Assembly (NCBI GenBank): GCA_002269645.1
Contig: NIVC01002478.1
Location: 1-64,000 of the forward strand
Length of the DNA stretch: 64,000 bases
Direction of reading: 5' to 3'
Source of the DNA: Macrostomum lignano
Lineage: Eukaryota
The position numbers and the translations under genes are program-made. The notes below the pieces were generated by a model. It made no database searches. It was not told the origin of the DNA and saw only the letters and a list, made by a program, of their open reading frames with translations. Below, in pieces: positions 978 through 57,346 of the stretch (its first letter is position 1; every line of letters begins with the position of its first letter).

Positions 978-1861
978 CTGAGAAAAACATATTGAACTGA
1001 ATAGGCGAGATCTTTTTCAGCGATTCATTGAAATATCCATACAACTGTCCACATCCTGTTATCATCCGTTGCGTTTTAAAAATGATTGATTGTAAATAAA
1101 CAAACGTTTACGTTTTTGCATTACATGTATCTTCCGCATGAAATTAAAACAAATTCAAACTGAAAAGCTTATTTATCAGAGTTTATTATAGTCAAATGAA
1201 GTCCTCCATGTACGAGTACCTACAGCGTTTAAATGAATTCAGTAGCGTGATACGCATTATGCTATATACACTTATTTGCACTCAGAATTACGAGACCCGA
1301 ATGAATTTTGAATACAAACTGATAAGCATTGACAACAGTTTCGTACTTAATAGGGACGAGCCGCAGGTAGGTTGAGGGAAAATATTAACTTATAGAATAC
1401 TCAATTGAAATTAAATATAGCCGATATGTTGACGGTAAAATGAACAGGAACAGGCATACTGCAGAATGTCAGCTGACTAAGTCGGAGTAAATTTGTACAG
1501 CGGCTGGTCAAAAAGGCGACGAAAACAACACCCAAAATACGCTTTCAAGACCATAATGAAGACGCCTGGTATAGCGTACTTGTATGTACAGCTGGCCTGA
1601 ATGTACAGTTTGTACAGAGAGTTAATGAATTACTCAAACGGTATGACCAAAAGGTTTATTCTAAAGACTGAACGAGATTTTTAAAGCCAGACCTAAATGG
1701 TTGGTAGAGAAAGACAACACGTGATTAAAGTACACTCCTACGAATAATGAATAAACATTGAGGGTTTGAGGGTTTCCAAGGTTCAAAGGTCATCGAAGTT
1801 CGGAGATCGCACCAGATGTCCCATTTCTAGGAACGCAGCAGATCAGTTCTCCGTTTTGGTG

Positions 1862-2281
1862 TCACGCCGTCGGTCTCGAAGACTGCCGATGCCTACGTCG
1901 GCTCTTGGCCATGTAGTGCAGAATCTGCCGAGCCAGACTTTTCTTAGTCTGACCCTCCGGCGGCTGGTCGAAGCCGCTGTCGTTGGACAGCATCCAGCTC
2001 ACTTCCTCGTCGGGCAGGACGCTGGCAGGATTCGTGACGGCGCACTGGTCTGCGCCGCCGCTCCCGACCCTGTCGTCGACTTCGCTGCCGTGTCCCAAAT
2101 CTGTTGATGAAGTCAACGAAGACGATGCGCTGTCATCGATTCCTTCGTCTACGATTGTCGTCTCTGTTAAACCAGCCGAGTTTAATGCCATGAATATTCC
2201 GATGATCTTGGACGCAACGGCAGAGCTTGCAGATAGAGTTGTGCTTTCCGGATGATGACTAGATAGAAAAACTTGTGACAT
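1862..2281 (-). CDS. Orphan gene A: ~139 aa Ser/Asp-rich low-complexity protein with basic C-terminal helix; 5' end uncertain
   Basis: ATG-initiated GC-rich ORF, colinear with gene B (SLTSSxDLGHGSEV, VTNPAS, SNDSGF, KxLxxQ[IV][LV]xY[MI]A). A possible acceptor near 2259 means an upstream exon may exist. Confidence 0.55.
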   Translation of the reverse strand: MSQVFLSSHHPESTTLSASSAVASKIIGIFMALNSAGLTETTIVDEGIDDSASSSLTSSTDLGHGSEVDDRVGSGGADQCAVTNPASVLPDEEVSWMLSNDSGFDQPPEGQTKKSLARQILHYMAKSRRRHRQSSRPTA

Positions 2282-2669
2282 CCATTTTGCTTCAATGTAT
2301 GTATAAACTCAGAACCAATTAGTAGGTAGTACGAAAATAGATTTCTGTATAACGCTCAATGGGGTGTGCATATGTGTCGTACATTACCCCCTGTTTGTAG
2401 CTCCACTCTGTATCTAGCGGCCAATTCGTTGGCTAACAACGGGTACGTACGAAATTCTTTTCAAGGTCAGACAGTCCACCCACGTATTGTATATAAACAA
2501 ATTTAGTAAATTTACATTCAGTCAGCGCGTGACTAGACTATTTTTGAATTATGTACGAATAACAATGGAGAGAAATGAAGAAAATGGGTCAGCTGACAGC
2601 TTCGTGGAATAACGAGCCCCGCTTATTATAAAAAAACATTAATTCGGGGGAAAATCCGAAAGCAAGTAC

Positions 2670-3318: not shown

Positions 3319-4092
3319 TACGAGGGTAGTCTTACTTCATCTATCTACAACATACTTTTTGAATTTTGTAAATATCTACCACCGGCATTCAGAAGTTATG
3401 TCCAATCTAGTACTAAGCCCTTGCGTATCGCTTACAGAAAATGACTTAATCAATCCACCAATGCTCCACCATGACAATGCCCGACCACACACGGCTTCAA
3501 GGACAGTGAAGGCAATTCAACGCATGAAGTTTGAACTCCTGCCTCACCCACCTTACTCGCCTGACTTGGCGCCAGCAGATTTTTGTCTTTTTTCCGAGGC
3601 TGAAGGAGCTGCTAAGAAGCAACGTCTACGTCAAACGTCACTGCCTGAAAGAAGAGGTTCGGTGACTCCTTGCTTATGCGATTCCCAAGGAGCAGTACGC
3701 GCATGCCATTGATTCACTGCGCATTCGCTGGGAGAAATGCGTCAACTGCAACGATGACTACATGGAGAAGGTTTCAATCCCTAAAGACAAGGATATTTGA
3801 TCGCGAATTTGACTGTCATGTTAAGAACTATAATGGATATGCTCTTACAGATTGATTATCATTTTTTTCCGGAATATACCTGTTTTTTAGTTTCTGTAAG
3901 CTATAGCCAGGGGCACAGTACTACGTCGTAGATTTGACATAACTTCTGAATGACGGTAAATAGTTACAAAGTTCAAAAAGTATGGTATATATAGATAAAG
4001 TCGCCTTCATTTAACGTCAAAGCCATTAATCTATCTGAATCCAACTATGAGTTAGGCTGAAAATTCCCACTACTTTTAGGACACCCCTCGTA
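3319..4092 (+). mobile_element. Degenerate, internally deleted mariner (Tc1/mariner) element
   Basis: Termini tacgaggg (3319) and ccctcgta (4092) are inverted but match for only about 8 nt; transposase relic inside. Confidence 0.65.
3461..3770 (+). pseudogene. Mariner transposase C-terminal fragment, frameshifted
   Basis: HDNARPH and PPYSPDLAPADF (mariner catalytic-domain motifs), then RWEKCVNCNDDYMEK in another frame. Confidence 0.9.
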
Positions 4093-4143
4093 GTTCGTTA
4101 AAAACTATAGATACATGATGGATGATGGACATTTGAAAATCAA

Positions 4144-6058
4144 TTAGGGGGGGTTCAAAGTTCGCTGTTGGCGCCGGTCTCTGGCTATGTAGCGCACAAC
4201 CTGATGGCCAAGATTTTTATTGCGCTGCATCTCCTGTTGACCTGTAGGGGCTGCTTCAGAGTAGGCGGCAGCAACGGATGCGGCGGCGGCAGCGGATGCA
4301 ACAAGGGCCTCGATATTTAGGCTGCCAAATCCGCTGTCGTTTGACTGCATCAGGCCTATAAAACATAGGCGTAGGAACGTTTCAAAAAGTGGGGGGGGGG
4401 CAGGTTCAGTGACGGATTTAGGGGGGGCGCATAGGGTGCACGCCTTCGTCGAGTTAGCTTTTTTATATGGAAAATGCCCATTATCATGTACCAATTATTT
4501 TCAGAACCCATCTTGTCAGCACTCATTTTATAAAGCGCCACAGGCACTCATTTTGGCGCCGCAGGCACTCATTTTAGCGCTGCAGGCACTCATTTTAGCG
4601 CTGCAGGCACTCATTTTAGCGCCGCAGGCACTCATTTTAGCGCTGCAGGCACTCATTTTAGCGCCGCAGGCACTCATTTTAGCGCCACAGGCACTCATTT
4701 TAGCGCTGCAGGCACTCATTTTAGCGCCGCAGGCACTCATTTTAGCGCTGCAGGCACTCATTTTAGCGCCGCAGGCACTCATTTTAGCGCTGCAGGCACT
4801 CATTTTAGCGCTGCAGGCACTCATTTTAGCGCCGCAGGCACTCATTTTAGCGCTGCAGGCACTCATTTTAGCGCCACAGGCACTCATTTTGGCGCCGCAG
4901 GCGCTATGTTTTGTCGCCCTGCAGCAAAATGTATTCATGCAAAGCAGCAAAAACCAAAAATAAGCAAGAAGTCTACATATTACGTTTAAAAAGTGGGGGC
5001 CATGGCCCACTGGCCCCCGTTCCTACGCCTATGCTATAAAATGTTTTAGGTGTGTTTCCCTCTCTCTTATTCTTCCGTCTCTCTTTGACGATGTCTCTAA
5101 GCGTCTATACTTCTAGTCAATTAAATAAGTCGATGGTTCGATATGTTTCTCTCGATCTTTAACCCTCAACAAATATGTTTGTTTCTAGTTGCTGATGGTT
5201 GCAATGTCAGATAGATATTAGTCTGGCAAATGTATTGAGCAATTCAGTGAAAATGAGAGCCACAGGCTACTTATCGATACTGTTGCACGAGTACTTCGAT
5301 ATCTTGACGTGTGTCCAGAGGGTCGCCATCATAAACCCAAAAAAATCATAACTCCAAAAGCACTTCCCATTATAAACCCGAAATATCATAAACCCAAAAT
5401 ATCATAACTCCGAAAGTGTTAGCAACGCCTATCATACGAGCTAAACCCGAAATGTCACAAACCCGATCGAAATATCATAACTCCGAAAACCAAAACCAAA
5501 ATAGTGTTGGACATTGCTAGAACTTTGGAGTTATTATGTTATGATATTTCGGGTTTGTGATGCCCCCCCCCCAAGAGTAGAGGAGTAGCGGGAGTGGGGG
5601 CAAAGGGAGGCGGAGAGGAGGCAAGCTAGGGAGCTGAGGAGAGGAGGCAGAGCTTCATTCTCACTGAACGCAAGTACATATAAGATTTCTATAACGCATT
5701 TCATTGGTGTTCGCTTCACACATGGGAATCTTTACCGCCGCACAAGCATGTGCTGTACTTTCCTGATAGAAAAACCTTCTGAAGTTCGCATTAGACTAAC
5801 ATCGGGCATAACATGCTTAAATTAAGATCACTTCACCTATAGTAGATTCAGATGGGATGCTGGCAGGGTTGGTGACGCGATTTGCGTCGCTTCTTGAATC
5901 ATCTTCTACTTCGCTGCCGTGCCCTAGATCTGCCGATGAAGTCAAAGACGTTAAGCCTCCTTCTTCATCGTCTGAACCGTTGCGATCAGCGCCATTACCG
6001 ACGCTGGGATCGATATTGGCGCTCGATGTACCATTAAATTCATAAGGTTGAGAAGCCA
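4144..6058 (-). CDS. Orphan gene B, 5'-partial: complement(join(4144..4355,5837..6058))
   Basis: Phase-1 junction ATA G|gtgaag ... ttttatag|GC CTG gives VTNPASIPSESTIGLMQSNDSGF, which aligns without gaps to gene A VTNPASVLPDEEVSWMLSNDSGF. The upstream exon is preceded by a ctaacag acceptor. Confidence 0.6.
4364..5033. mobile_element. hAT-type MITE with 8-bp TSD ctataaaa
   Basis: TIRs cataggcgtaggaac / gttcctacgcctatg; ctataaaa at 4356-4363 and 5034-5041. A solo similar end lies at ~22982. Confidence 0.9.
4534..4903. repeat. 21-bp minisatellite (gcaggcactcattttagcgc[c/t]), ~17 copies, inside the MITE
   Basis: Directly visible; explains the spurious QALILA and SACGAK ORFs. Confidence 0.95.
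5320..5552. mobile_element. Foldback-like MITE with modular ataaacccgaaatatc subrepeats (copy 1)
   Basis: Inverted ends gggtcgccatcataaaccc / gggtttgtgatgcccc; homologous to 20866-21095. Confidence 0.7.
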
Positions 6059-6929
6059 CTGTTAGTGTTTTTTAGTTAGCTCGAATTCAAACTATTATTT
6101 CTTCAAGAGAAACTGCGATGGCAAAAATTAGCGAAGAATAATGCAGTATAATGTCGGATACAGCTGGGGCAGAAACCTGCTGTCCGCTTACGAATATATA
6201 CTCGTATATTTCTGCTGTTTCCAGACCCCGAAGGCTTCAAGAGTGTCTTTTCTCTGTTTTTTTCTCTTCTCTGCCTCTTTTTATTAGCGTCATCAGCACC
6301 ATTGCCGTCACTCAGGATAGTCAGCTCGCATCTGTTCTCAGAAATGTTGGTACTGCTTATTGTGTACGCTCGTAGCTTTCTGCAAGCTATCTGATACTTA
6401 TGCATTCAAAAGCTCGAAATATAACCAAAGCCGAAAGCTACTGCATGGTAAGTTCTTGTTATATAAAGTTTGTTCGTTAAGAAATTTCCAGCTTTTGAAC
6501 CCCCTCTCCCCACTTCATAGCGCTAAAATATGCAATCAGTACAGTGTACATCATTCTTTACCGAAAAGAGGGTAGAAAACAACACACCATCTCCAACCCC
6601 CGAACCCCCGCACAGGCACCAAAGAGCAAATTCTGACCTTAAAATTTTTCCGGATCTCCGCTGAAGCGGGGGCGGCCCTATTGAGAGTGTAAATCAAAGT
6701 TTTGATTTATTAATATGCGACATCGTGTCAAGTACGAGCGTACAGACAGCTTGAAAATTAAAACTAAATAGTAGAAACTAGCAATCTTCGCCCCCCCGAT
6801 GGGGGGCATCTAGATAGAATCTCTGGCTCTCTACAAGTATCAAAAAGACGGCCAAAAAAGTCTTCACATAGACAATAGAAAAACTGCTCAAATGAAGTGC
6901 AATGCAAAAAGAAAACATCCTAGGACAGC

Positions 6930-8150: not shown

Positions 8151-8164
8151 AGATAGTAGGCACC

Positions 8165-8525
8165 CCATTTATGTTTGACATGGTAGCTGTTTTGTGTTTG
8201 ACATTGTGGCTTTTTAATGTTTGACCTGGTGGCACTTTAATGTATGCAATGATGGCTCTTTAATGTCTGACATGGAGTCACTTATACGCTTGACATGGTG
8301 GCTCTTTAATATTTGACATGGTGGCACTTTAATGTCTGAAATGAAGTCATGTATGTACGCTTGACATGGTGACTCGTTGATGTTTGACATAGTGGCTCTT
8401 TTATGTTCGACATGGTGGCTCTTTAATGTTAGACATGGAGTCATATATGTTTGACATGGTGGCCTTTAATGTTTGAAATGGTGCCACTTTTGTTTGACAT
8501 TGTGCCTCTTTTATGTTCAGCATTT
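8165..8525. repeat. Degenerate ~30-bp tandem repeat (tttgacatggtggctctttaatg)
   Basis: Recurrent gacatggtgg core at regular spacing. Confidence 0.75.
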
Positions 8526-8565
8526 TGTTTTTAAGATGTTTTAATAAAAAAATTATTTTGCACTA

Positions 8566-10581: not shown

Positions 10582-11099
10582 AAATCTTGCAGACTCCATT
10601 AGCTCGTACTATTTAAATTAAAATGCATTTGAGAAGTGGCTATTTGCTTTTAATATCTAATCAATCAAAACTATTGTACTATTATATATTGTACAAGTAA
10701 TTTTTTGCGCCCCATAAAGCCGGAATCTGAGGGCATATCACCCAAGCTTCTTGATAAGGACATTGTGAGATATAGTATAGCATACGGCTATCATGTGATC
10801 ACGTCAGATGCTGCAAAATTGGGATTGGAATATGAACCCGTATGGGACAGGGCAGGGTAAAATTTTAAGCACTAATGGTGTAGTTTTATGGCTTGTTTTT
10901 GGCATAGAACGGGTAGCGAATGCAGAGCGGACTTATTTATTCTAGTTTCCTTCGGCTATAAGGGGGCGGGGGGCTAAACACTTATTCTGACTAGAGCGAC
11001 TAAGTCGCACTGTTCTCTCTGTATCTCATCTATACTCAAAACCTCACTGAAGAGCTCAGTTCTAACGCTAACACAATACCGGCGTAGAATTTTTATATG

Positions 11100-11670
11100 C
11101 TGCCTGGCACTTGCAAGGCTAGAGTTGAGTTGAATTTAATGAGACCAGTTAATTAGCCTGTATATGGTTAAATGTCTAATGCTACGAGCGTACTGGGTAG
11201 ACCACCCACTGAGGCAACAGAAACCGACTTGTTGTCAGACTTAAGATTATAGATAAAGCGGCTTCAGAATTATCACACGAAGCCATAAAGCTCGTATTGC
11301 ATTTTCATGTTTGGTGCTGGTGGCATGGCGAAGAGAGGAGTGGAAGAGAATTTATCGATTAGCTTAGACCCCAGCAACTGTGGAAATCTGGGACGGCATC
11401 TCTTAACCCCCCACTTTAGAGCCAAGTGAAGTGGGGGGTTGGTGGCTCACTGCATGAGTAAAAGCGTGTGGAAACGTTGGCTAGAAATAACTATGGCTAC
11501 CCCTTCCCCCACACACAAACTCTCTGCTCTCTCTCTCTCTCCACATCCCTGTCTCTGTCTGTCTCGCCTCCCGCAGCCTTTTCAAATCGCCCAGACAAGT
11601 AAACAGTGTAAAAATACAATATGGTACTAAATTGTTTTTTATTCGACAATACTCTGAAGCAAGGGTCTTG
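11100..11670 (+). repeat. Upstream segment of gene C, homologous to 19310-20010 upstream of gene D
   Basis: Shared colinear blocks gagttgagttgaatttaa, cttgttgtcagacttaagattatagataa, agaccccagcaactgtggaaa, cttaaccccactt and aaacagtgt..acaatatggtactaa; also agaatcttacgcttctattgct at ~12849 and ~20069. Confidence 0.85.
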
Positions 11671-13314: not shown

Positions 13315-16118
13315 ATGGCCGAGGGCGGTGGAGAAGAGGATTATTTCCCTGGAAGAGTTAGCACCTCACAGCAGGCCTCGCCGGCACAGTCCATAACCTC
13401 TCTGTCCCGTTCAGTGCAAGATATTGTTACCTACAGCCTCGAGACGGGCGAATCCGCAATACCAGAGCCCATTGCTCAGAGTTCTGCATCGGGCATCGAG
13501 CACCAAATGGAGGAGACTGACCATTCGTTAGCTCGGAGCTCTGCACCGGGCATCGAGCACCAAATGGAGGAGACTGACCATTCGTTAGCTCGGAGCTCTG
13601 CACCGGGCATCGAGCACCAAATGGAGGAGACTGACCATTCGTTAGCTCGGAGCTCTGCACCGGGCATCGAGAACCAAATGGAGGAGACTGACCATTCGTT
13701 AGCTCGGAGTTCTGCACCGGGCATCGAGCACCAAATGGAGGAGACTGACCATTCGTTAGCTCGGAGCTCTGCACCGGGCATCGAGCACCAAATGGAGGAG
13801 ACTGACCATTCGTTAGCTCGGAGCTCTGCACCGGGCATCGAGCACCAAATGGAGGAGACTGACCATTCGTTAGCTCGGAGTTCTGCACCGGGCATCGAGA
13901 ACCAAATGGAGGAGCCTGACCATTCGTTAGCTCGGAGCTCTGCACCGGGCATCGAGCACCAAATGGAGGAGCCTGACCATTCGTTAGCTCGGAGCTCTGC
14001 ACCGGGCATCGAGCACCAAATGGAGGAGACTGACCATTCGTTAGCTCGGAGCTCTGCACCGGGCATCGAGAACCAAATGGAGGAGACTGACCATTCGTTA
14101 GCTCGGAGCTCTGCACCGGGCATCGAGCACCAAATGGAGGAGACTGACCATTCGTTAGCTCGGAGCTCTGCACCGGGCATCGAGAACCAAATGGAGGAGA
14201 CTGACCATTCGTTAGCTCGGAGTTCTGCACCGGGCATCGAGCACCAAATGGAGGAGACTGACTATTCGTTAGCTCGGAGCTCTGCACCGGGCATCGAGCA
14301 CCAAATGGAGGAGACTGACCATTCGTTAGCTCGGAGTTCTGCACCGGGCATCGAGAACCAAATGGAGGAGCCTGACCATTCGTTAGCTCGGAGCTCTGCA
14401 CCGGGCATCGAGCACCAAATGGAGGAGCCTGACCATTCGTTAGCTCGGAGCTCTGCACCGGGCATCGAGAACCAAATGGAGGAGCCTGACCATTCGTTAG
14501 CTCGGAGTTCTGCACCGGGCATCGAGAACCAAATGGAGGAGCCTGACCATTCGTTAGCTCGGAGCTCTGCACCGGGCATCGAGCACCAAATGGAGGAGCC
14601 TGACCATTCGTTAGCTCGGAGTTCTGCACCGTGCATCGAAGTTGAGGTGGAGGAGCAGCCAAAATGTTTGGCAACTCAGAGTTCTGCAGCCAGCATGGAG
14701 CTTAATCAAGAAGCGGCTTCAGTTTCGCAAGATCCGACCACTACAGTTTCAAGAACAGAGTGCCAGGCAGAGGAGGCTGCGCCTGAGTTGGTCGATGTAC
14801 CAAACCCGAGTGGAGATGTTTCAGCAATCGAAGGGGATTGCCCACGCCCAGAGATTAGTTGCATCATACTTACGAACGAAACGTCAAGCAGCTCATCAAC
14901 ATCTGTAGATTCTAGCCATCCAGTTTTGAAACTCAATCACTCTTCCAGCGTGCCGAATGCGAAACAACTGAAAATAACTGAAAGAGATGAACGGCCACCT
15001 GCTTCACGGAAGGGTGCTGACGAAACTTCCAGCAACAGTCCCGAAGTAGCTGGGATTAAGCTGAAATTGGAGCAGTTGCCAAAACCCATCAATTCCAACC
15101 AACACCCAGAGTTGGTTGTCGCTCGGGTTGAACGCTTTGAACAGCGTTCGTTGCCGCACCCAGAGAAGCAGCAGCAGCTGAGTTCAAGCCTAACGCAGAT
15201 TGCAAAAGGGTAAAAAATTTGCTGTTAATTTTTTAGGGGTTCTCTCGAATTGAATACTTTTTCTTTAGCTATCAAAATAATTTATCATATAGCTTGTCTT
15301 GTATTGTAGACAAGACGGAATGGAACAAACTGACCAGAATACAACGACAAAAAGCGCTCAGAGCAGCTCCGTATCGTCGACTAGCGCCGCCACTGCATCA
15401 TCTGCTTCGGCCGAGGGTTTGCAATTGCCCGACTGTCCTGATACGCAAGACCTAGTACCAGACGCGTTGTTTGACGAGCCAAGTGACCAACAGCTAAACT
15501 GCGAGACACCAACCTGGTGAGTCTGAGATAGGGTAATTATTTCACAAGCACTAACCATGTATTACATGCTCGTAATTTTACAAGTCTATTCCGGAATGCG
15601 GTTGAAAACCATAAATTTCTATTAGCAGCGTTCTATTAGTTTGATCATGCTCGTCGACTCTCTGAAAGTCTTAAGGTTTATGAAAGTGCATGGATGCTAG
15701 TCGGTTAGGCCTAGACGTTGCGAAAATGAAGCTTTGTGACGAAAGCACCTGTTTGGCCACCTGAACTGATAAAGACTCTCAAACTGTTTGTAGCGCTGGC
15801 GGCGGCTCCGGCCTACCGCTAGCTCAGGAAGACTCGGCTGACGGCTTGGCCAACGTCATAGATGAGCCAGCGGAAGACGAAGCCCAGCGGCAGTCGTTGC
15901 TGCGCGGTTACGACAGTCTGCCTTCGGTCATGAACGCAGAAGCAGTCAACTGGCAGCTCAGCAGACGCGGTCATCAAAGGCAGTTTCAACTACAGCATAA
16001 CAATCAAGATGAAGAGCAGCAACGGCCAAGACCAATAGCGACTCGAATCTGGCTTCGGCTGCGGCATCTGTGCAACTCATACAGCTGCCTTGGGCAACGA
16101 ATCAACGTGGAAGATTAG
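13315..16118 (+). CDS. Orphan gene C, 808 aa predicted: join(13315..15209,15310..15516,15794..16118); disordered acidic protein with 19-aa repeats and a C-terminal Cys motif
   Basis: aaaATGG start; both introns GT-AG and phase 2 (GG|gtaaaa..tgtag|A; TG|gtgagt..tgtag|C); spliced length 2427 nt is divisible by 3; exon layout identical to gene D. Confidence 0.8.
13484..14640 (+). repeat. 57-bp in-frame coding tandem repeat, 20 copies of SSAPGIE[HN]QMEE[TP]DHSLAR plus 1-2 degenerate copies
   Basis: Counted in the ORF translation. Confidence 0.95.
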
Positions 16119-16429
16119 TAGTCGTTTCAAAGATATCTCATATCGTAATTACTTTCAAACAGCATTTGTCCTTCCCTATCTGTTGAATATCGCATTGTAG
16201 ATAGTCTTTTACTAGGGAGGATCCACGGCTTAGTGGTCTAGAGCCCTACCGAAATTAGCGGAATGGGCGACGCTCACCTCCCCGCTGCGTCCTCGGACCG
16301 CCCTGCAGCAGCCCTACCGAAATACGAGAAATTGACTCACCTGCATGATTGATGCCCCCCAGAGACAGCTTTTTTAAGGAGAGCCACCTCCTTAGCCCAG
16401 TACGTGTTGCACTACCTTTTGTTATACCC

Positions 16430-16660
16430 TCAAGGCGGCGCCCCTGTGCTCCTTCAGTGTGACGCCCCTGTGGTACTTTAGTGTGACGCCCCTGTGTTTC
16501 TTCAGTGTGGCGCCCCTGTGCTCCTTCAGTGTGACGCCCCTGTGGTACTTTAGTGTGACGCCCCTGTGTTACTTCAGTGTGGCACCCGTGTTCCTTCAGT
16601 GTGACGCCCCCTGTGTTGCGTCCACGGTGTGGCAGCCCTATATTGTATCCTCAGTGTAAC
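16430..16660. repeat. 24-bp minisatellite (cttcagtgtggcgcccctgtg...), related to the adjacent 28-bp array
   Basis: Shares the tcagtgtggcgccc core. Confidence 0.85.
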
Positions 16661-16879
16661 ATCCCTTGTATATTGTGTTTTCATAGAAATGTATCTATCT
16701 CTATCACTATATAACTTTAGCTCGTATAATGCAATTTTACCTTTTACAATTCACAGAACGCACTTTCCATTCTACGCATTTTGCTCCATTTAATGTCTAT
16801 ACAATAGCAAACAAACTGCACGGAAGACCTATGCTAAAATATAGGCCATAGCTATATGATTAAAAAGTATGCTGTCCTC

Positions 16880-19020: not shown

Positions 19021-20094
19021 ACGCACCTTGTGTTGCGTCTTCAACGTAGCGTCTCTGTTTTATACTAAGTAAATAAATAGTAAATTGTTTGTTTATTTTC
19101 TACAAATTGAGAAAAATCAACTAATATATAGCTAGTTTTTCAGTACATATGTTGTTACACGTGTTCTTGTGCACTTGACTTGAGTTTAAGTCAAGTTTAT
19201 TATCAAATTAGTGCACCCCGTGGTTTCATAAAGGAAATTTGCGTTCTACTCTTCATAGACAAACATACAGATAAGCACTGAAGCTTACAGTAAAAAAAAT
19301 AATCTTACTTAGGCTAGAATTGAGTTGAGTTGAATTTAACGAGTCTATGGCTACCTGTCAAATGCTACTGGATAGACCATGCGCCCACTGAGGCAGTGGA
19401 AAAATTGAAAAAGTCGTCTGTGAAGACAGAAAGCAACTTGTTGTCAGACTTAAGATTATAGATAATGCAGCTTCAGAGTTATCATATGAAATTTAATAAC
19501 TCAAATCATACGAAAATTGATTCTAATTGTTCAAGCAATTCCCACGCCCACTAGAACCACAGCTCTCCTTTTTATTTTTTGACAGACATAATAAACCCTT
19601 TAAACAACGAACAGGCAGGCAGGCTAAGCCATATATTACTGTATATTGTCGCGCGGCGCTAGCTGGTATGCCCGGCTTACGAAGTGAGGAGTGGATGAGA
19701 AGACATTTAGCTAGACCCCAGCAACTGTGGAAAGCTGCATGGGCCAGCAACTCTTAACCCCACTTTGTAGCGTCTGCATGAAGTTGAGTAAGTGAATGCA
19801 GGAGAGCCAAGTGAAGGGAGGGCAGGTTAGGGGGAGGGTGCGTCGGTGGCTGAAAGCACAGGAGCAAGCAGGAGCGTGAGGACCCTCTCTCTCTCTGCCT
19901 TGTTTCTTGCCTCCCCGTTTCTGCGTTTCACGCAGACAATTAAACAGTGTTAAATTACAATATGGTACTAATTTTTTAGATTAACTTTAGATTGACAATG
20001 TTCTATAGCAAGAGTTTAATGTATACGAGCGTAAATAAATACACAGACTAGAATATGGAATTACAAGTAGAATCTTACGCTTCTATTGCTTTTT

Positions 20095-20363
20095 CAGTGG
20101 CGGCGCAGCACCTCCGATTAGGGGGGGGGGGCGGTGGATGGGTGGTCAGGTGGTTGGGTGGTCCCTCAGCAAATTTTTAGGATTAGAGCAGCGCATTACA
20201 CTAAATTCTGAAAAAAACGCATATGACGAGCTCGTACTAAAAAATTATGGTGGGTGACCCCACGGAGGGATGAGAGGGTGGTCACCCCCCCAGGGAGGTA
20301 GGAGCGTGGTCACCCGGGGGCAGCAGCCTCCTCTGCCCCCCCCCACCACCTGCGCCGCCACTG
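20095..20363. mobile_element. hAT-type MITE with 8-bp TSD tgcttttt
   Basis: TIRs cagtggcggcgcag / ctgcgccgccactg; TSD at 20087-20094 and 20364-20371. An empty homologous site lies upstream of gene C at ~12863. Confidence 0.92.
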
Positions 20364-21095: not shown

Positions 21096-22050
21096 CGGCT
21101 CATTCAACCGTGAAAGTTGTTGAAAAACACACACGAGAATCGGCATAAATCGACTTGACAGTGCAATTAGACAACGATGTCCAAGCTGGTACGAGTATAA
21201 AAACCGCAAACAGCTTGGCAGGCGATAATAAAATAATTTTAAAGCAGGACTGCTTGCATTCGCCAGAGATCTCTTTGATGTGGAATAACCGAAAAACTTT
21301 AAAGGGCGGTAGTTATGGCGGGTGTCTGCGTCGGTGCGTCAGTCCCCCTTGCGCCCTCGCCTCCTCCGCGCCTAGGTTTTTAAACCCCCCTTTAAGGCTT
21401 GGTCTCAGGCGCGCCCTGGGGTGGGGGGGGGAGCAAGCAGCCCCCTCCCTTCAAGCCGCTGAAAATTTTTTCAGGAAGCTTTTTTGGTGCGGGAAGGCGA
21501 CGAAAAATCTGGGGCCCTGCCCGTGCCAATTGCCACCTTTCTCTCTTAACTCTGCCTCTTGCTTTGCATCAGAACCAACAGTTAAATCGGTCCCTATCCA
21601 TGCTGAATAGCAAACAGAATTGAGGGTTGACATTAGTCAAAGCCAAAAAGAGCGGTGAGTAGGGACTCAGGGACTGATAGACTCTTTCGCATTGCTAACT
21701 GCTTACAAAAAACATGCCCTGCTGGCTGGCTGGCAAAAAAATAGACCTCTGTCATCTGGCCCTGTGATCCACCCCGCCCCCCCCCCCTCAAGAATTTCTG
21801 AGTGCGCCACTGCGTTGGCCTTGGAGCTGCATGCAATTGCTCGGATTTTTTGTTCTTCTGTTTTTGTTCTCCAACTGTTTTGGCTTAAATATCCTTTCTT
21901 ACACGGCTTATTCGGCACTTATTGCACAATAAATGCATGATGCGAATGGGGGTCACTTTCGCTCCTCGGGGCCTTTGCCTTCGTCTCTCTCCTACTGCTC
22001 AAATTTGGTTGACAAGTAACTAAGCTATATGAGCGTAGATTGCAGAGATT

Positions 22051-26729: not shown

Positions 26730-26730
26730 C

Positions 26731-34485: not shown

Positions 34486-34497
34486 GAACGGGGAGAG
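34486..34497 (+). other. Polypurine tract
   Basis: gaacggggagag immediately before the 3' LTR TG. Confidence 0.85.
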
Positions 34498-39052: not shown

Positions 39053-42000
39053 GATTATAAAATATAAGGTAAATTGATATATATCTAAAACGGGTACCTC
39101 TCATTTCGCCGATTCTCATTTCGCCGACATTCTCATTTCGCCGATTCTCGGTTCGCCGACATTCTCATTTCGCCGATTCTCGGTTCGCCGAAATTAGTTT
39201 CATAATCCATAGAAATAAAGACTTTCCGTGACAATATTTGCGTTCTCCGGGATTTTATTTGGTAATATTCAATAATATCCCATAAAGTCTTTATGTCTAT
39301 GGTTTATACGAGATTACACATGCCTTTTTCGGGAGTTATTTTCATAAATCCCTCGGGCCTCAGGCCCTCGTGATTTATACAAATAACTCCCTCAAAAGGC
39401 ATGTTTAATCTGATACATAACCATCTGGACATTAGACCATAGCCCGTAAGCCCAAATGGGCTGCAAAAAGCTATATTACCAATACAATACTTTATTTTTT
39501 CAAGCCATAGACATCTAAATCACACTTGCATTAGTGTAGTTGTCTATGGTCTAATGTCCAGATGGTTATGAAACTAATTTCGGCGAACCGAGAATCGGCG
39601 AAATGAGAATCGGCGAAACGAGAATCGGCGAAACGAGAATCGGCGAAATGAGAATCGGCGAAATGAGAATGTCGGCGAACCGAGAATTGGCGAAATGAGA
39701 TTCGGCGAACCGAGAATCGGCGAAATGAGATTCGGCGAAACGAGAATCGGCGAAACGAGAATCGGCGAAATGAGAGGTACCCATCTAAAACGGCGCATAA
39801 AATGTTGACATCAGTTAAAAAGCCGCCTGAATCTGCCAAACCAACTGATTGTGTACGAGCTAGTTGAAAATATGTCTCGACAATAAAAATGACCGGCTTA
39901 AGTAAATTCGTTCTTGTACAGCGATGAGTCATTCATACACTATCTGGATAGCTGGCCAAAGTACTCGTAGAGTGAAGCTGAGCCCAGGAATTTTAACTTA
40001 GCAAGTCTTGTTACTCGTAGCTAGGTTTAGAATTCTTTGGCTCACGCGCAAGCTCTATCCAGCCTGCATAAACAATTAATTTTTTGAGTGCTTCCCAGGC
40101 ATAAAATTGGAGACACTAAGTTAGCTAACAAATTAAGCATTTACCTGGATTCCAGTTTAACAGGTTGTAGGCAAAGTTTATCATTGTTCCGAGTACTGTT
40201 TACGTGCGAAGAAACAGCGTAGAAACAGATGTCTGTCACCGGACGAAGACAGGCCAAGGCCTTACAAAGGTAATTTAGATAGATAAAAAATATAACTAGT
40301 GGAAATATAAGTGTCATACAGTCACACTATTAGCCTCACCCGCTTCGGATTATCAGATTGAAGCCAATCCGTGATTCCATCGGCCGTTTGCAGAATAGCC
40401 TGCGAAATTCGGCACAACTAACTGATCAATATGACAGTAGAACAGTAGACTGAATGCAGATTTAAATAAGGCATCAACTTACTGGCATTCGATCGTGAAT
40501 GTCGCTGACAGTCTCGCTGGCTGGCACAGTGATCACCGTGAAGCTGTGCAGATCTGGCTCACCTGGCTGAGGGACGGGCGAGGATTCGGCGAGGTGGGGA
40601 AGAGGGAATTATATTTTTTAATAGCAACAACATTTAATACAGCAACTGAGGATCTGGGAGGCTGGCCTAGCAACTGACACTCTGGGAGGCTGGCCCAGCA
40701 ACTGAGGATCTGGGAGGCTGGCCCAGCAACTGAGGATCTGGGAGGCTGGCCCAGCACTCGAGGATCTGGGAGGCTGGCCCAGCAACTGAGGATCTGGGAG
40801 GCTGGCCTAGCAACTGAGGATCTGGGAGGCTGGCCCAGCACTCGAGGATCTGGGAGGCTGGCCCAGCAACTGAGGATCTGGGAGGCTGGCCCAGCACTCG
40901 AGGATCTGGGAGGCTGGACCAGCAACTGAGGATCTGGGATGGGAGGGTATGGCCCAGCCTGAGGTTCTTATCCGGAAGTACCGAGCAAGAAACCATAGAG
41001 CTCACCATGCCCTGGTGCACATCGAATAGAGCCGCAATGAACATGAGGTTGGGCGGCTTTTCGCCGCAGTCCCGCTCCAGCCAGCCGGGCGGGTGGAAGA
41101 AGTAGGCCTGCTTCTGGCCCCCGGGGCCCAGCTTCGGCCGTTTCCACTCGTAGAAGCCCTCGCAAAGTAGAACGCAACGACGGCCATTCAGTAAAAGATT
41201 ACGGAAGCTGGCCTTCTCCATCAGCGTCTCAACTCGAGCGTTCGACATGTTGAGAGTGAAATTTGAGGTGTCTCGGCCTACCCAGGAGGGCACCAGGCCC
41301 CACTTCATGGTGGAGATGAGCCGGCAGCCCTGATTGGAGTACAGCACTGGCCTGTGGGATTGTGTTGGCAGACTCAACTGTGACACGGTGCCGTGGAAAC
41401 TGCTGCATGACTTGAGGCAGTCATAGAGAAGGTCATATAAGCGAACAGTACTGATAGCAGTAACAAATAGGGTCATGTAAATAATCTGGGACATCTACAG
41501 ATGGTCATACGAATGACCTAAAAACACTAACAGAGGGTCATAAGGATGACCTAGGGACAGTAACAGTGAGGTCTATAAGGATGACCTAGGGACAGTAACA
41601 TAGGGGGTTACACAGCTGATCAACAAAACGAAGCGACCTAGTAACAGAAATGAGAGCCTAGGAAAGGGTCCTGTAAAGTTCAAATAGTGTCTTCAACGAA
41701 TATGGAACTAAAAATGATTAGCTGCACAGTGACAAAGATCGGGTGCATATATTCACTTTATAGCACTTAGTTAGGAGGCTTTATTAAAACCAAGGCCTGT
41801 GTTACAATTAACTGGTAGTGGAGTTTATCTTTTGAATAAATATTTAATTAAATACAAAATTATTATCGCGATATGATGATAAGGCTGAAGTACAGACTTT
41901 GTAAGCATTTTTGTGAAGCTAAATTTAACTTGGCAAGTTTAACAGATTTAGACTGCAAGCTTAACGCGAAAAGGTGCTTACACAATAGAATTTACCGCAA

Positions 42001-43893: not shown

Positions 43894-44554
43894 TAAATTC
43901 TACTTGATGTTTTCCTAAAACACCAATACTGTGTAATACTGTCTGCATTAAGAAAATAAGTAACAAGCATAATACAATTAGCAAAAAATGAACTGAATTT
44001 AATTGTTTATACACACACACAGCAGCGGCAGCACAGAACCTTTCGGCAGTCTATTTATATTTTTTGTTTTGGGGTTACGAGTATGCAAGCACTATTATCA
44101 GCCCAGTGTTCGCTATCGTGCGTACTTTTAACATAAACAAAGTTTAGAGACACAAACAGAGCATAGGTACACACCTAATCTGCGTATCAATAGCAACAGG
44201 TGCACAAGTTTTCGCTGACAATTAAAAAAGCGGGCAAAAAACGCTGATTTTGCTACTGAAAATAACAGTAGATGAAGGCCTTTCAAGCGAGTAAAGCGTA
44301 CCTAGTTATTCCACTTAGTATCCGTGATATTAGCTACCTTTTAAAATAGTAAGTACATTACCCACACATCTATTATTCCTTTGAAAACATTGCACATTAC
44401 AGCACTAATTTACTACCAGTAACTTTACCAGCATAAATACCAATTTAAAATTTCACAAATATTAGATCGCAGGATTATTAAAATGAACAATATGGCTGAT
44501 AGCCAAAACCCTTCAATCTATACAACTGAAACGTTAAATAACGTTAAATAGCTC

Positions 44555-53340: not shown

Positions 53341-56183
53341 CTGCCAGTTGCACATCTGGCCATTAGGGCAGGTGTAATAAAGACAGTATATACCATTGCA
53401 TATCGCATAATATATACAGAATGCTCAATCACATCTTTTTCATGAAGCCAAATTAAAATTCGTGCACACTACTGTTGTTGTGAAGTCTCTGGCCAGTAGT
53501 ATTAACTAGCAAAGAATAATTTAGCAAAAAGTATCAAAAGCAGATACAGATCATATTACAAGGATCAAATGTAAAGCCCAGTCAATTTATTTAGGAAGTC
53601 AAAACTTCCTAAACTAAACTTTATTTAGGAAGGCACCAGTGATGCAGACGAATTCTGGAAAACAACTTGGCCACTGCCCTTGTGCAGCGTTCACTGTATT
53701 TCAAGCTATGCATGTGAATATTAGCAAGAACAATGGGAAAGAACTTTTCTTGCAGCCATTGACCCACACCCTTCAGAACAAATACATCTTTGTCTGTTGT
53801 CATAAAGGTGCACTCTATCTGATAGACTGCAGATGTGATTGACTGCCTTTTTGGGTATACAATGACCAGGTTTCTAGTTCCGTCCTATTTTTGAGTTGCA
53901 GAAAAGTGCATCGCTTCCAAACCATTGACTTTCAATGCCTGTTGGCATTCTTTGCACTTGCACTCAGATTTGAAGAGCTTGAAAGCAGCCAGCCAGCCCC
54001 AATGTAGATGCACTTTTTAGTTAATGCAGTAAAGTTTACTGAAATTAGATCATTGCCCTGCAACCTAGGACTCTGCACATTTGCACTTGTAGCTACCTAG
54101 GCCTGAAATTTGCCCAGCAAAGTGCTGCCATCTTTCTTGCAATTGCTGTTGGTCTAATAATGCTAATGCTAAACAATAGCAAGCTTATTTGACTAGCAGT
54201 GAGGCAAGACTACTAGCTAAATAATTATAAGATTATTTTATTAACACCTACCAATGAGGTAGGATTACTAGCTAAATAGGCATTGCTGCCTTTGTTGAAA
54301 AAAATATGTTTTTTGGAATTTACAGGGGTATAGAAGGATTGCTGATTTTTTGGTATACATTAAAAACAAACAATTTTATACATTTAGTAGCATAAAAGTA
54401 AACAGTCTAACAACTAAAGCTATATTCTATAGTCTAATATAGTAGTTTATTATAGATTTTAAATGTTTTAAAAAACTTCTAGGGATTGACTGTGATCATG
54501 GTCACAATCCCGAAAACTATGATCACAAGGAAAAAATCATGCATAGTCTTTTGCCAATCACAATTCATGAATTTTGTGAATTAAACATTACTTTTTTTCT
54601 AGTCATTTCTCCACTTGAAAAGCTGATTTTAGCATGTTTGAGAAAAGTCAGGAAAATGAAATCAAAAGCAAACATTTGCATTTTATCTTTGATAAAATTG
54701 CAATTAATTAATCAGTCTTCACACAACATGTTTTGCTGAACAATTGGCATATTTAGGCAAGGCAATAATATAGATTCAAAGAGATAGTATAATTTTTTTA
54801 AAAACTAGTAAGCCAAAATGATTGTAAGTATGGATAACAGAGTTGGATGGCCCAAAATAAGAGGCAAAAAGGAGAAAATAAGGAGATTTTGGAACTAATT
54901 ATAGACACTAGTAATTATCTTCCCTATTGGAATAAAAGTTGAAAACCCACGGACGTGCACTTTAGAGTAGAGTCAAATTATTTTACCATGCTTTAGCATT
55001 ATTAGAGATGTTCCATTGTAATTGACGAAATTGTCCATTTCAATCTGTTGAAATTGAAATTTGACAACTTTCCAAAATTGAAATTGAACTTGAAATTTCC
55101 CATTGAACTTGAAAGTTTAATATGACTAGGCCTAACACTTACTTTTTTACATTTTGATTTACTGCTTATGCAAAACAAAATACATGTATATGTAGCAGAA
55201 ATTACTCGCTGTTTATTTTTAGCCACTTAGACACTTTTGAAATGTTGACTTCCAATTTTTTTCAAAATTGAAATTTGCTCTTAAAAATTTTGAATTTTAG
55301 AAAATTGAAATTGAAATTTCGGAACATTGCTAGGTATTATAAATGACAAGTGTATAGGCTCCTTCTCCAGAGGTATTAGGCCCCCTTCTATGTATATTTA
55401 TTTGCTTGAGCAGCAGCCAGTGGGGAAGGGCACTGCGCGAGCAGGCCCTGCGCGCTTGTGTGCGCACTGCGCTTTAGAAAAATTTCAAAAGTGCGCCGGA
55501 CACCGTCCACAGTTTTACAACTTTTTCCTGTAGGGATTATCTTGGAAAACTTTCCTGTGCTAGGCCCAAAAATTTGCATGCCTTGCATGCCAAAAGTAGG
55601 TATGTACAATTGGCGTACATCACTCCTAAGAAAATAATATATGTGCATACCTGGTGTGCACTTTATAGATTCATGCGGAAAAGTTATTGTGAAAAAAAGA
55701 TGAAAAAAAATCATTTTTAGGTATAAAATTATTAATTGCTAGCTTTCTGTGTTTTTAAAGCTTATAATAAAGCATTCATACTAATCTTTGTGTGTATCAA
55801 TTTTCCACCATACATGCCCAACACCCATCTGACCTGTCCAAACTGATGGGTGAAATGGCCTTAGCTTAAGTCAGTTGCAAAATCGAAAACATAAAAAACA
55901 AAAACTTTTGGAAGAAAGAAAGGAAGGGAAGAGAAGGAAAAGAAAGGAAGGAAAAGGGAAAGAGGAGAGAAATAGAAAGAGAAGAAAAGAGAAAAAGGCA
56001 AGGAAAGTCATATACTAAGCGAAAATTAAGTTACAATCAGAGGAACTAAGTTGCAATTAGGAGGAACTAAGTTGCAATCAAGAAGAACTAAGTTGCAATC
56101 AGGAGGAACTAAGTTGCAATTAAGAGGAGCTAAGTTGCAATTAGGAGGAACTAAGTTGCAATTAGGAGGAACTAAGTTACAAT

Positions 56184-57346
56184 TAGTGATGGACCGAATG
56201 TGGATTTTTGCAAGTTTCCGAAACCGAATCCGAATGTACAAAAAAAATCCGAATCCGAATCCGAATGTTTCCGAATGTAAGCAAAAAGTGTAAGGTAAAC
56301 GGCGGGAGTAACTATGACTCTTTTAATTTACGAAAATGTCTTGTCATCTAATTAGTGCGCACATAAATTGACTGACAAGATTCCATCTCTCCTGGGATTA
56401 TATTTGTACTCGTACTTTTATCTTAGGGGTCAGATATGATCACAATCGTGAATTCAAGACCATTTTTTCACGATAGTGATTTTGTTGAAACCTGTTCCAT
56501 CAGTTGTGAATTTCTGCTTACGTTTTTATTAGAAATATAACTTTTCTACTTGATTTACCAAAAAACGTTGAACACAATGTGTAAAGAATTAACAAATTTT
56601 AAATTTGTTGACTTGATAGCATTACGGCCAAGTAGCTATTATCAATATACGAGTATGATTTCTTTTCTTGTTTGTTATTTTCAACACTTGTAACTTACGA
56701 GCTCAATATACATGTATGCTAATATAAATTCACAATCATGATCACGCCTGCCTTTGAAAAATTCACGCATGACCAAAATCTTCTACTTGTCTGACCTCTA
56801 CTGATATCTATTGCGAAACCAAATTTAAAGAGACGGACTTAGATAGGAAATTCAGTTCTACTTCTACCGTGTTACATGAACATCTAATTCTAGTACTACT
56901 GACTATAGCTAATGAGTGACATATATATACAGTGCAATTATGATAATTTTACTGTACGTACGTACAGTCCATGTGACCCGTGCAGTTGCAATTTTGCATT
57001 TTGAAAAAACCTGTTATTACACTTAAACAATAATTACCAAAATATTTCCGTAACTTTAGGTTTATCGTCTTACGGGTCCCTAGGTTTAGTAAATTTACTT
57101 ATTTAAATTTTTTTAAACATATATTGCTGCAAAAATAGACAATCGTAGAAAAAAAGAATAACGTGATAGATTTTGCTCTTTGCCTTTTAATTTTCTTTCT
57201 TTTTAGTTTTTAGTTTCTTTATTTAACGGGTTGCATGCTTTGGTTTCTTGATTTGTAATATTTATTTTAGATTTGAATTTTAGAAGCACATTCGGAAATA
57301 TTAGGAAAAAAAAATTTCCGAATCCGAATATTCGGATCCATCACTA
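56184..57346. mobile_element. Non-autonomous hAT element with 8-bp TSD gttacaat
   Basis: TIRs tagtgatggaccgaat / attcggatccatcacta; ccgaat subterminal repeats; TSD at 56176-56183 and 57347-57354. Confidence 0.9.
56293..56392 (+). pseudogene. Decayed ~100-bp 28S rRNA fragment
   Basis: ggtaaacggcgggagtaactatgactct and gtcatctaattagtg match the universally conserved LSU segment around the R2/I-PpoI site; the rest is diverged. Confidence 0.85.

What the first reader, a model, noticed from the sequence alone, without database searches (positions are those of the whole stretch)
1211..56655. Dispersed TA-CGAG(C)(G)-TA micro-insertions that look like transposon excision footprints, with two empty sites in the window
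Seen, either strand, by eye: TACGAGTA x11 (1211, 6199, 21190, 36499, 36543, 36743, 39962, 40012, 44076, 56407, 56648); TACGAGCTA x6 (5435, 10600, 16718, 36174, 36339, 39854); TACGAGCGTA x5 (6365, 6733, 11183, 20024, 36091). Uniform-composition expectation is about 2, 0.5 and 0.1. Two paralog pairs show these are insertions that duplicate TA: gcctatcaTA-CGAGC-TAaacccga (5426) vs gcctatcaTAaacccga (20944), and aatgcTA-CGAGCG-TActgg (11178) vs aatgcTActgg (19361). The mariner relic at 3319/4092 has TA|CGAG termini. Established: Tc1/mariner elements target TA and leave a few terminal bases plus TA on excision. Inference: a CGAG-ended family excised at very high density and left 4-6 nt footprints, longer than the usual 2-3 nt. 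That would imply an unusual cleavage stagger or repair path, and a pervasive source of new CpG-containing motifs.
Basis: partly seen in the sequence, partly recalled or inferred. Interest (0 to 1): 0.85.

Follow-up and report, generated by a model that had tools for sequence, protein, structure and literature searches.

The report
Transposon excision scars in a flatworm genome
This flatworm (Macrostomum) DNA is peppered with tiny TA-flanked CGAG insertions that are most likely the scars left when a cut-and-paste transposon jumped out; that kind of scar is already known from the fly transposon Minos, so only its density is unusual.

Summary
With tandem repeats masked, counts against an order-3 Markov expectation are 11 vs 0.69, 6 vs 0.21 and 5 vs 0.03.

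The window comes from Macrostomum lignano or a close relative. The enrichment repeats in 56 kb of independent M. lignano DNA: 8 sites against 0.69 expected.

Seven sites have a homologous copy without the insertion, either a paralog or a syntenic locus. Six of these carry a single TA and one carries CA. The difference is exactly TA plus 4, 5 or 6 bases. Insertions private to each homolog show events in both lineages.

Only CGAG, CGAGC and CGAGCG are enriched. The 2-nt and 3-nt versions, and other fifth or sixth bases, are at background.

The best explanation is Tc1/mariner-type excision footprints. A TA-flanked mariner relic with CGAGGG termini lies at 3319-4092.

The claimed novelty fails. 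Minos has TA|CGAGCC ends and a "characteristic six bp footprint". What may be new is the density (about 0.5 per kb), the 5-nt and 6-nt classes, and the missing source element. TACATGTA and TAGGCCTA are enriched too.

The parts
1211..1218 (+). TA-CGAG-TA micro-insertion (4-nt class)
5435..5443 (+). TA-CGAGC-TA (5-nt class); the empty paralogous site is at 20944-20960 (TA at 20952-20953)
6199..6206 (-). TA-CGAG-TA (4-nt class)
6365..6374 (-). TA-CGAGCG-TA (6-nt class)
6733..6742 (+). TA-CGAGCG-TA (6-nt class)
10600..10608 (-). TA-CGAGC-TA (5-nt class)
11183..11192 (+). TA-CGAGCG-TA (6-nt class); the empty paralogous site is at 19361-19371 (TA at 19366-19367)
16718..16726 (-). TA-CGAGC-TA (5-nt class); the syntenic M. 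lignano locus L003 (~5089) has a single TA
20024..20033 (+). TA-CGAGCG-TA (6-nt class)
21190..21197 (+). TA-CGAG-TA (4-nt class); syntenic L003 (~5865) lacks the 6 bp and has CA where the TA would be
36091..36100 (-). TA-CGAGCG-TA (6-nt class); also present in L003, so older than the split of the two copies
36174..36182 (-). TA-CGAGC-TA (5-nt class), sharing a TA with TACATGTA at 36168; the L003 copy has decayed to TAGCTGGTA
36339..36347 (-). TA-CGAGC-TA (5-nt class); shared with L003
36499..36506 (-). TA-CGAG-TA (4-nt class); shared with L003
36543..36550 (-). TA-CGAG-TA (4-nt class); shared with L003
36743..36750 (-). TA-CGAG-TA (4-nt class), private to the window; empty (single TA) in syntenic L003 at 13144 and in the inverted-repeat arm at 36124-36142
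39854..39862 (+). TA-CGAGC-TA (5-nt class)
39962..39969 (-). TA-CGAG-TA (4-nt class)
40012..40019 (-). TA-CGAG-TA (4-nt class)
44076..44083 (+). TA-CGAG-TA (4-nt class)
56407..56414 (-). TA-CGAG-TA (4-nt class)
56648..56655 (+). TA-CGAG-TA (4-nt class)
3319..4092 (.). Internally deleted mariner relic, TA-flanked, with termini CGAGGGTAGTC... / CGAGGGGTGTCCTAAAAGT (like the Hsmar2 ITR); it encodes HDNARPH..PYSPDLAP
16631..16650 (.). Empty site in the window (TA at 16641-16642) where syntenic L003 4598 carries TACTCGTA
22018..22035 (.). Empty site in the window (TA at 22026-22027) where syntenic L003 6612 carries TACGAGCTA
15563..15574 (-). Compound variant TA-CGAG-CATG-TA; shared with L003
37366..37376 (+). 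Variant TA-CGAGCGA-TA (7 nt)
20222..20236 (-). Variant TACGAGCTCGTCATA, close to CGAG+CTCG with both ends retained

Best explanation
These are fixed excision footprints of one or more cut-and-paste transposons of the Tc1/mariner (IS630-Tc1-mariner) superfamily with termini TA|CGAG...CTCG|TA, in a Macrostomum flatworm genome. The proposed steps are as follows. The element inserts at a TA and duplicates it. On excision, the transposase cuts the non-transferred strand a few bases inside the element, so each flank keeps TA plus a 3' overhang of terminal bases. End joining then leaves TA + CGAG(C)(G) + TA. For the 4-nt class, the two overhangs CGAG/CGAG pair at their outer C:G and G:C with two central mismatches. 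Repair of those mismatches gives CGAG or CTCG, which is the Minos model of Arca et al. 1997. The 5-nt and 6-nt classes are nested extensions of the same end, suggesting a source terminus CGAGCG. Shown here: the micro-insertions are real, they sit at TA with TA duplicated, they are recurrent and lineage-specific, they show no sign of constraint, and a CGAG-ended mariner exists in the window. Inferred: that an element once occupied each site, the length of the stagger, and the repair route.
For: Enrichment holds against order-3 Markov and repeat-masked backgrounds. It is replicated in 56 kb of independent M. lignano DNA: 5, 2 and 1 sites against 0.52, 0.14 and 0.03 expected. Flanks are unique. 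Seven sites have a homologous copy without the insertion, six with a single TA and one with CA. Five are window-filled (5435, 11183, 16718, 21190, 36743) and two are L003-filled with the window empty (L003 4598, 6612). The difference is always TA + 4/5/6 nt. Five sites are shared with the syntenic locus, and one of those has decayed by a substitution there. Orientation is balanced, 9 plus to 13 minus, p = 0.52. No target consensus appears beyond TA. One-mismatch neighbours are in modest excess (31 vs 22.5, 12 vs 6.7, 5 vs 1.1), as expected for decaying neutral sequence. There are no sites in tandem arrays, where 5.7 would be expected (P = 0.003), and none in the brand-new LTR retrotransposon. 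The sites cluster, as local hopping would produce. Only CGAG, CGAGC and CGAGCG are enriched; all tested alternatives are at background. The TA-flanked mariner relic has CGAGGG termini. Precedents: Minos ends are TACGAGCC... (PMC3680223), Minos leaves a six-bp footprint (PMC3386967), and Minos excision alleles of +4/+6/+8 bp exist (PMC6980720).
Against: No intact or MITE-like element with CGAGC or CGAGCG termini turned up in 128 kb (window plus three loci), and no Tc1-type transposase motifs were found. The only CGAG-ended element seen has G, not C, at position 5. Its expected 5-nt and 6-nt products, CGAGG and CGAGGG, are not enriched. No occupied ('full') allele was seen at any footprint site. 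A simple trimming model for both-end products (CGAG+G, CGAG+TCG, CGAG+CTCG) is not borne out: only CGAG+CG would fit. The density of about 0.5 per kb is far above anything I know to be reported for footprints.
Confidence: 0.8

Rival explanations
1. The micro-insertions come from a mutational process that does not use a transposon. An example would be a sequence-specific nuclease or repair pathway acting at TA, or templated insertion from a common donor.
For: No source element with matching 5th and 6th bases was found. The restriction to CGAG, CGAGC and CGAGCG is not explained by simple trimming of 4-nt ends.
Against: Templated or polymerase-theta insertions copy local sequence and would not give the same 4-6 bases at 30 unrelated sites. 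TA duplication plus terminal bases is the signature of Tc1/mariner excision. CGAG is the documented terminus of Minos and of Hsmar2-type mariners. One such mariner lies in the window.
Confidence: 0.08
2. The motifs are scars of programmed elimination of TA-bounded germline-limited elements, as with ciliate internal eliminated sequences, seen in a somatic-biased assembly.
For: They have TA boundaries and are dense and clustered.
Against: States differ stably between two assembled homologous loci, and some are shared and decaying. That pattern fits inherited mutations. To my knowledge no programmed elimination is known in Macrostomum. Ciliate excision is precise and leaves one TA.
Confidence: 0.03
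3. The motif is a selected cis-regulatory or protein-binding site.
For: It is a short, exact, over-represented word containing CpG.
Against: It appears as presence/absence insertions in repeats and intergenic DNA. It is polymorphic between homologs and one copy has a substitution. Orientation and flanks are random. The three length classes have no common spacing.
Confidence: 0.02
4. The pattern is chance, a compositional effect, a hidden dispersed repeat, or an assembly or sequencing artefact.
For: None beyond the small size of the window.
Against: p = 1e-7 to 1e-10 against order-3 and masked backgrounds. The flanks are unique. The enrichment is replicated in another assembly, GCA_002269645.1. 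Five sites are identical in two independently assembled homologous sequences.
Confidence: 0.02

Closest known systems
Minos (Tc1 family, Drosophila hydei) excision footprints
   Same: Minos has a TA target and ends TA|CGAGCC... (PMC3680223). It leaves a 'characteristic six bp footprint', that is TA plus four terminal bases (PMC3386967; also Arca et al. 1997, Genetics 145:267, from my own knowledge because the paper is not held). This is literally TACGAGTA/TACTCGTA. Excision alleles of +4, +6 and +8 bp are also reported (PMC6980720).
   Different: No Minos-like element or Tc1 transposase was seen here. The Minos sixth base is C, but CGAGCC-TA occurs 0 times and the 6-nt class here is CGAGCG. 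The host is a flatworm. The footprints are fixed in the genome at about 0.5 per kb, rather than recovered in an excision assay.
Hsmar2-type mariners (CGAGGG termini)
   Same: The Hsmar2 ITR is TACGAGGGGTCTTCAAAAAGT... with CGAGGG highlighted by its authors (PMC3770610). The window relic has TACGAGGGGTGTCCTAAAAGT, TA flanks and mariner catalytic motifs.
   Different: To my knowledge, mariners studied so far cut 2-3 nt inside the element. The CGA 3-nt class and the CGAGG/CGAGGG classes are at background here. This family therefore explains at most the 4-nt class.
Tc1/Tc3 and Sleeping Beauty footprints
   Same: The principle is the same: TA + terminal bases + TA after end joining (PMC2874221). 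The Tc1-type TA-CA-TG-TA word is itself enriched here, at 9 sites against 0.71 expected.
   Different: Those retain 2-3 nt per end (SB: TAG(T/A)CTA). Here 4-6 nt of one end are retained.
Genome-wide excision polymorphisms in rice (Mariner/Stowaway etc.)
   Same: It is a precedent for reading excisions out of genome comparisons (PMC4423477).
   Different: In rice only 94 excisions were found in more than 63% of two genomes, and most carried deletions or filler. Here the footprints are clean, uniform and orders of magnitude denser.

Membership tests
Tc1/mariner excision footprint | The insertion sits at a TA and is flanked by TA on both sides | tested here: met
   True of all 22 window sites and 8 independent sites in the loci
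Tc1/mariner excision footprint | The homologous empty site carries one TA, and the difference equals TA plus a few bases | tested here: met
   Seven sites have a homologous copy without the insertion: six with one TA, one (opposite 21190) with CA. Differences are exactly 6, 7 or 8 bp
Tc1/mariner excision footprint | The retained bases equal the terminal bases of a TA-flanked TIR element of the same genome | tested here: inconclusive
   The mariner relic at 3319-4092 starts CGAGGG, so the first 4 nt match and the 5th and 6th do not. No CGAGCG-ended element was found in 128 kb
Tc1/mariner excision footprint | Both orientations occur, because the two ends are reverse complements | tested here: met
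   9 plus to 13 minus, binomial p = 0.52
Tc1/mariner excision footprint | An occupied allele (element present) exists or existed at the same site | not testable with these tools
   Only one homologous locus could be fetched, and no full site was seen
Minos-type footprint (Tc1 family) | A 6-bp footprint of TA plus the four terminal bases CGAG/CTCG | tested here: met
   There are 11 window sites. Sites 36743 and 21190 differ from their empty homologs by exactly 6 bp. Literature:
Minos-type footprint (Tc1 family) | The source element is a Tc1-family (DD34E) element with CGAGCC termini | tested here: not met
   No Tc1 transposase motifs in the window or L001-L002. CGAGCC-TA occurs 0 times. The sample is only 128 kb, so absence from the genome is not shown
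Mariner (DD34D) element, Hsmar2-like termini (the relic at 3319-4092) | TA target duplication, CGAGGG inverted termini and mariner catalytic motifs | tested here: met
   TA on both sides, with 14 of 16 terminal bases matching between the ends. It encodes HDNARPH..PYSPDLAP and matches SETMAR at E = 1e-12 and Mos1 at 3e-9. Hsmar2 ITR. It is not intact: about 770 bp, with the N-terminal part missing

The most novel reading that the evidence does not exclude
One very active, still unidentified family with terminus CGAGCG may be the source. Its transposase would cut the non-transferred strand 4 to 6 nt inside the element. A 6-nt overhang CGAGCG would anneal to its partner by four base pairs around two mismatches, extending the Minos heteroduplex model. 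Its hit-and-run activity, repaired almost always by end joining in the Macrostomum germline, would have left more than 10^5 footprints. That would make excision scars a major class of small indel, roughly 1 in 15 in the 5 kb compared here.
Probability: 0.2. Interest if true: 0.6.

Novelty: new member of a known kind. Interest (0 to 1): 0.45.

Why it matters
Excision footprints are normally seen only in laboratory assays or as rare polymorphisms, so the historical excision rate of cut-and-paste elements is almost unmeasurable. If the density seen here holds genome-wide, Macrostomum would carry a readable fossil record of more than 10^5 excisions. The density is about 0.5 per kb of non-repeat-array DNA, and it was replicated in independent loci. 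Such a record would allow estimates of excision rate relative to point mutation, of local hopping and of germline repair choice, and it would flag a family that may still be active in a model flatworm. It also matters practically: these scars are a recurrent, homoplasy-prone class of indel. The mechanism itself is not new.

Tried and rejected
- **Literature search for the motif:** a search for TACGAGTA/TACTCGTA with 'footprint' found nothing relevant.
- **Arca 1997, Pavlopoulos 2007 and Metaxakis 2005:** these papers are not held, so secondary citations were used.
- **Species identification through the HMCES/SRAP exon:** it returned only bacterial YedK-like proteins.
- **Exact look-ups of three window ORFs:** nothing was on record.
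- **Search for TIR pairs TACGAG...CTCGTA and for any TA-flanked 16-nt TIR:** only the mariner relic and non-CGAG MITEs were found.
- **Candidate terminus CGAGCGTTGCGTCCTG... from the 36.1/36.75 kb palindrome:** it has no other copy in 128 kb, so it remains only a lead.
- **M. lignano DD37E 'Mosquito' family:** its ends are CTGGG, so it is not the source.
- **Mixed mismatch-repair products CGCG/CTAG, and both-end products CGA+TCG, CGAG+TCG and CGAG+CTCG:** none is enriched.
- **CpG-decay asymmetry:** TACAAGTA is 6 against 1.9 expected, but TATGAGTA is 0. TACAAGTA is also a neighbour of TACATGTA, so this is uninterpretable.
- **Absence from the LTR retrotransposon:** it is not significant on its own, because the element has few TAs (1.9 expected).
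- **TACATGTA/TAGGCCTA filled/empty test:** no informative homolog was available.


Full report
**Observation.** The 30 bases on either side of each site are unrelated, so the sites are not copies of a dispersed repeat.

The order-3 Markov expectation is 0.7, 0.25 and 0.02. The window is full of satellites, so I masked them, leaving 52.4 kb.

| Word | Observed | Expected (order-3, masked) | Poisson p |
|---|---|---|---|
| TACGAGTA | 11 | 0.69 | 2e-10 |
| TACGAGCTA | 6 | 0.21 | 9e-8 |
| TACGAGCGTA | 5 | 0.03 | 1e-10 |

These are the most enriched non-microsatellite words of the form TA-N4/5/6-TA. The excess of TACGAG as a whole (44 occurrences) is accounted for by these sites plus a few variants.

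**Where the window comes from.** GC is 46% and CpG observed/expected is 0.78. The window holds an HMCES/SRAP exon about 55% identical to the human protein. It also holds a Gypsy-type LTR retrotransposon at 25747-35480, whose 983-bp LTRs are 100% identical.

The retrotransposon integrase ORF is 88% identical to a Macrostomum lignano protein. The intronless ORF at 23874-24968 is 94% identical to M. lignano BOX15_Mlig027183g1. The window is therefore from M. lignano or a very close relative; M. lignano is a free-living flatworm.

I fetched three M. lignano loci from GCA_002269645.1: L001, L002 and L003.

**Replication outside the window.** I excluded the parts of L003 that are homologous to the window, which left 56 kb of independent M. 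lignano DNA. There TACGAGTA occurs 5 times (0.52 expected), TACGAGCTA twice (0.14) and TACGAGCGTA once (0.03) (sites listed). The proportions of the three classes resemble those in the window.

**The sites are insertions at TA.** L003 (NIVC01001512.1) is a syntenic homolog of window 13.2-36.9 kb. Its gene blocks are 93-97% identical and its intergenic stretches 68-85% identical. It lacks the LTR retrotransposon, whose target duplication is ATTA.

Comparing the window with L003 and with paralogs inside the window gives seven sites whose homolog lacks the insertion; six of the homologs have a single TA and one has CA. The difference is always TA plus 4, 5 or 6 bases.

| Filled site | Class | Empty counterpart |
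|---|---|---|
| window 5435 | 5-nt | window 20944 (paralog) |
| window 11183 | 6-nt | window 19361 (paralog) |
| window 16718 | 5-nt | L003 ~5089 |
| window 21190 | 4-nt | L003 ~5865 (TA is CA there) |
| window 36743 | 4-nt | L003 13144, plus both arms of a local inverted repeat |
| L003 4598 | 4-nt | window ~16641 |
| L003 6612 | 5-nt | window ~22026 |

Five sites (36091, 36174, 36339, 36499, 36543) are shared by the window and L003. One of them has decayed in L003 to TAGCTGGTA. The events therefore predate and postdate the split of the two copies and occurred in both lineages.

In 5.0 kb of high-identity alignment there are 169 substitutions and 15 indels. One indel is a clean CGAG footprint and one is a possible TA-TCG-TA.

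**Other properties.**
- Orientation is balanced, 9 plus to 13 minus.
- No target consensus appears beyond TA.
- The sites are clustered: 9 neighbour gaps of 250 bp or less against 2.6 expected, p = 1.5e-4. Density is 0.52 per kb in the 42.6 kb that is neither tandem array nor the new retrotransposon.
- Tandem arrays hold none, where 5.7 would be expected (P = 0.003). The retrotransposon holds none, but only 1.9 would be expected there.
- One-mismatch neighbours are in modest excess: 31 vs 22.5, 12 vs 6.7 and 5 vs 1.1. This is what a neutral, decaying population of sites with a mean age of very roughly 7-10% divergence would show.

The spectrum of inserted bases is sharply restricted. CG (2 nt) and CGA (3 nt) are at background. 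So are CGCG, CTAG, CGAGA/G/T and CGAGCC, and CGAGGG has only the single site supplied by the mariner relic's own terminus at 3319. The both-end products CGA+TCG, CGAG+TCG and CGAG+CTCG are at background too.

**Mechanism.** TA duplication plus a few constant bases is the signature of Tc1/mariner excision repaired by end joining (PMC2874221). The relic at 3319-4092 shows that a CGAG-ended family exists in this genome.
- It is TA-flanked.
- Its termini are CGAGGGTAGTC... and CGAGGGGTGTCCTAAAAGT.
- It encodes LHHDNARPH...HPPYSPDLAP, which matches the SETMAR and Mos1 catalytic domains.
- Its terminus resembles the Hsmar2 ITR TACGAGGGGTCTTCAAAAAGT (PMC3770610).

Footprints can outnumber elements without difficulty. 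Cut-and-paste keeps copy number roughly constant, while every end-joined excision adds a scar (inference).

**Comparison with what is known.** It does not.
- Minos, a Tc1-family element, has ends TA|CGAGCC (primer TACGAGCCCCAACCACTATTAATTC, PMC3680223).
- From my own knowledge of Arca et al. 1997 (Genetics 145:267; not held), most Minos footprints are the four terminal bases flanked by TA. They arise from a heteroduplex with two central mismatches.
- That model predicts exactly CGAG or CTCG, which are TACGAGTA and its complement.
- Minos excision alleles of +4, +6 and +8 bp are also on record (PMC6980720).
- Reviews give 2-4 bp as the usual Tc1/mariner range (PMC7913693).

**What remains open.** The 5-nt and 6-nt classes are nested extensions, CGAG then C then G. 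They do not match the mariner relic (CGAGGG) or Minos (CGAGCC), and simple trimming of 4-nt overhangs does not explain them. The simplest reading is a source terminus CGAGCG. A 6-nt overhang of that sequence would pair with its partner at four of six positions, but that is inference.

The only longer sequence starting that way is CGAGCGTTGCGTCCTG..., the TA-proximal end of both arms of a palindrome at about 36.10-36.13 and 36.75-36.79 kb. It has no other copy in the 128 kb examined. No intact source element, Tc1 transposase motif or occupied allele was found. With these tools, Macrostomum sequence could be reached only through three proteins, so this absence is weak evidence.

I found no paper describing such footprints in Macrostomum.

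**Verdict.** The footprint interpretation is well supported, and I give it about 0.8. The inference of a novel cleavage or repair mechanism is not supported, because Minos is a direct precedent. The features that may be new are the density, the 5-nt and 6-nt classes and the unidentified source. This is a new member of a known kind and of moderate interest.

Noticed in passing
window 1122, 9312, 23652, 35483, 36168, 43264, 43270, 55181, 56709; L002 and L003 also: TACATGTA, the canonical Tc1/Tc3-type footprint TA-CA-TG-TA, occurs at 9 sites against 0.71 expected (p = 7e-8), all in unique flanks. In independent M. lignano DNA it is 6 against 0.69. No filled/empty pair was available.
   Followed up: partly
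window 15706, 37602, 55127, 57937, 58612, 58894, 58913: TAGGCCTA (TA-GG-CC-TA) occurs at 7 sites against 0.68 expected (p = 7e-6). It may be a third footprint class, from an element with GG...CC ends. Site 15706 is shared with L003.
   Followed up: partly
window 36168-36182, 43264-43277, 15563-15574, 56696-56716; L002 5120 and 15005: Compound footprints share a TA: TACATGTAGCTCGTA (the same 15-mer recurs at L002 5120), TACATGTACATGTA, TACGAGCATGTA and TACGAGTACATG. This suggests repeated hits at the same TA or hot-spot targets.
   Followed up: no
window 36100-36134 and 36745-36790, with 36135-36742 between: Both arms of a 32-bp palindrome end ...CAACGCTCG-TA-CGAGCGTTG... at a central TA. A 610-bp TA-flanked MITE (TIR AATATTGC[T/A]AAATTATTTGAAGGCC) has split it at that TA. 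The arms may be terminal repeats of the CGAGCG-ended source family, but no other copy was found.
   Followed up: partly
window 25747-35480: A Gypsy-type LTR retrotransposon has 983-bp LTRs that are 100% identical and a 4-bp target duplication ATTA. Its gag, protease, RT-RNaseH and integrase ORFs are open and much more GC-rich than the host. It is absent from the syntenic M. lignano locus L003, so it is a very recent insertion.
   Followed up: yes
window 39092-39782: A 690-bp foldback element has long terminal inverted repeats built of 15-bp units (TCTCATTTCGCCGAT) and a 9-bp target duplication ATCTAAAAC, which looks Mutator-like. Its interior is a nest of further palindromes.
   Followed up: no
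window 13315-15213 and 23874-24968: Two intronless paralogous ORFs have similar N-termini (MAEG...). The second is 94% identical to M. lignano BOX15_Mlig027183g1, which UniRef names as RING-type domain-containing. The first contains a 57-bp in-frame tandem array of 20.5 copies, and its copy number differs in L003.
   Followed up: partly
window 40667-41494 (-): An exon of an HMCES/SRAP (abasic-site sensor) homolog runs into a 28-bp tandem repeat at 40640-40939. The protein database returned no flatworm ortholog.
   Followed up: no
window 16881-19043, 49835-51340, 6927-8166, 59547-60400: Large satellite arrays are present: a 28/56-bp unit, a 32-bp unit, a 17-bp unit and a degenerate (CT)n. The 16.9-19.0 kb array is missing from the syntenic L003, and synteny with L003 ends abruptly at window 36926.
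   Followed up: partly
window 16141-16147: TATCGTA (TA-TCG-TA, a 3-nt version from a ...TCG end) lies inside an 8-bp insertion relative to L003. It could be a 3-nt footprint of the CGAG-ended mariner, but the class as a whole is at background.
   Followed up: partly
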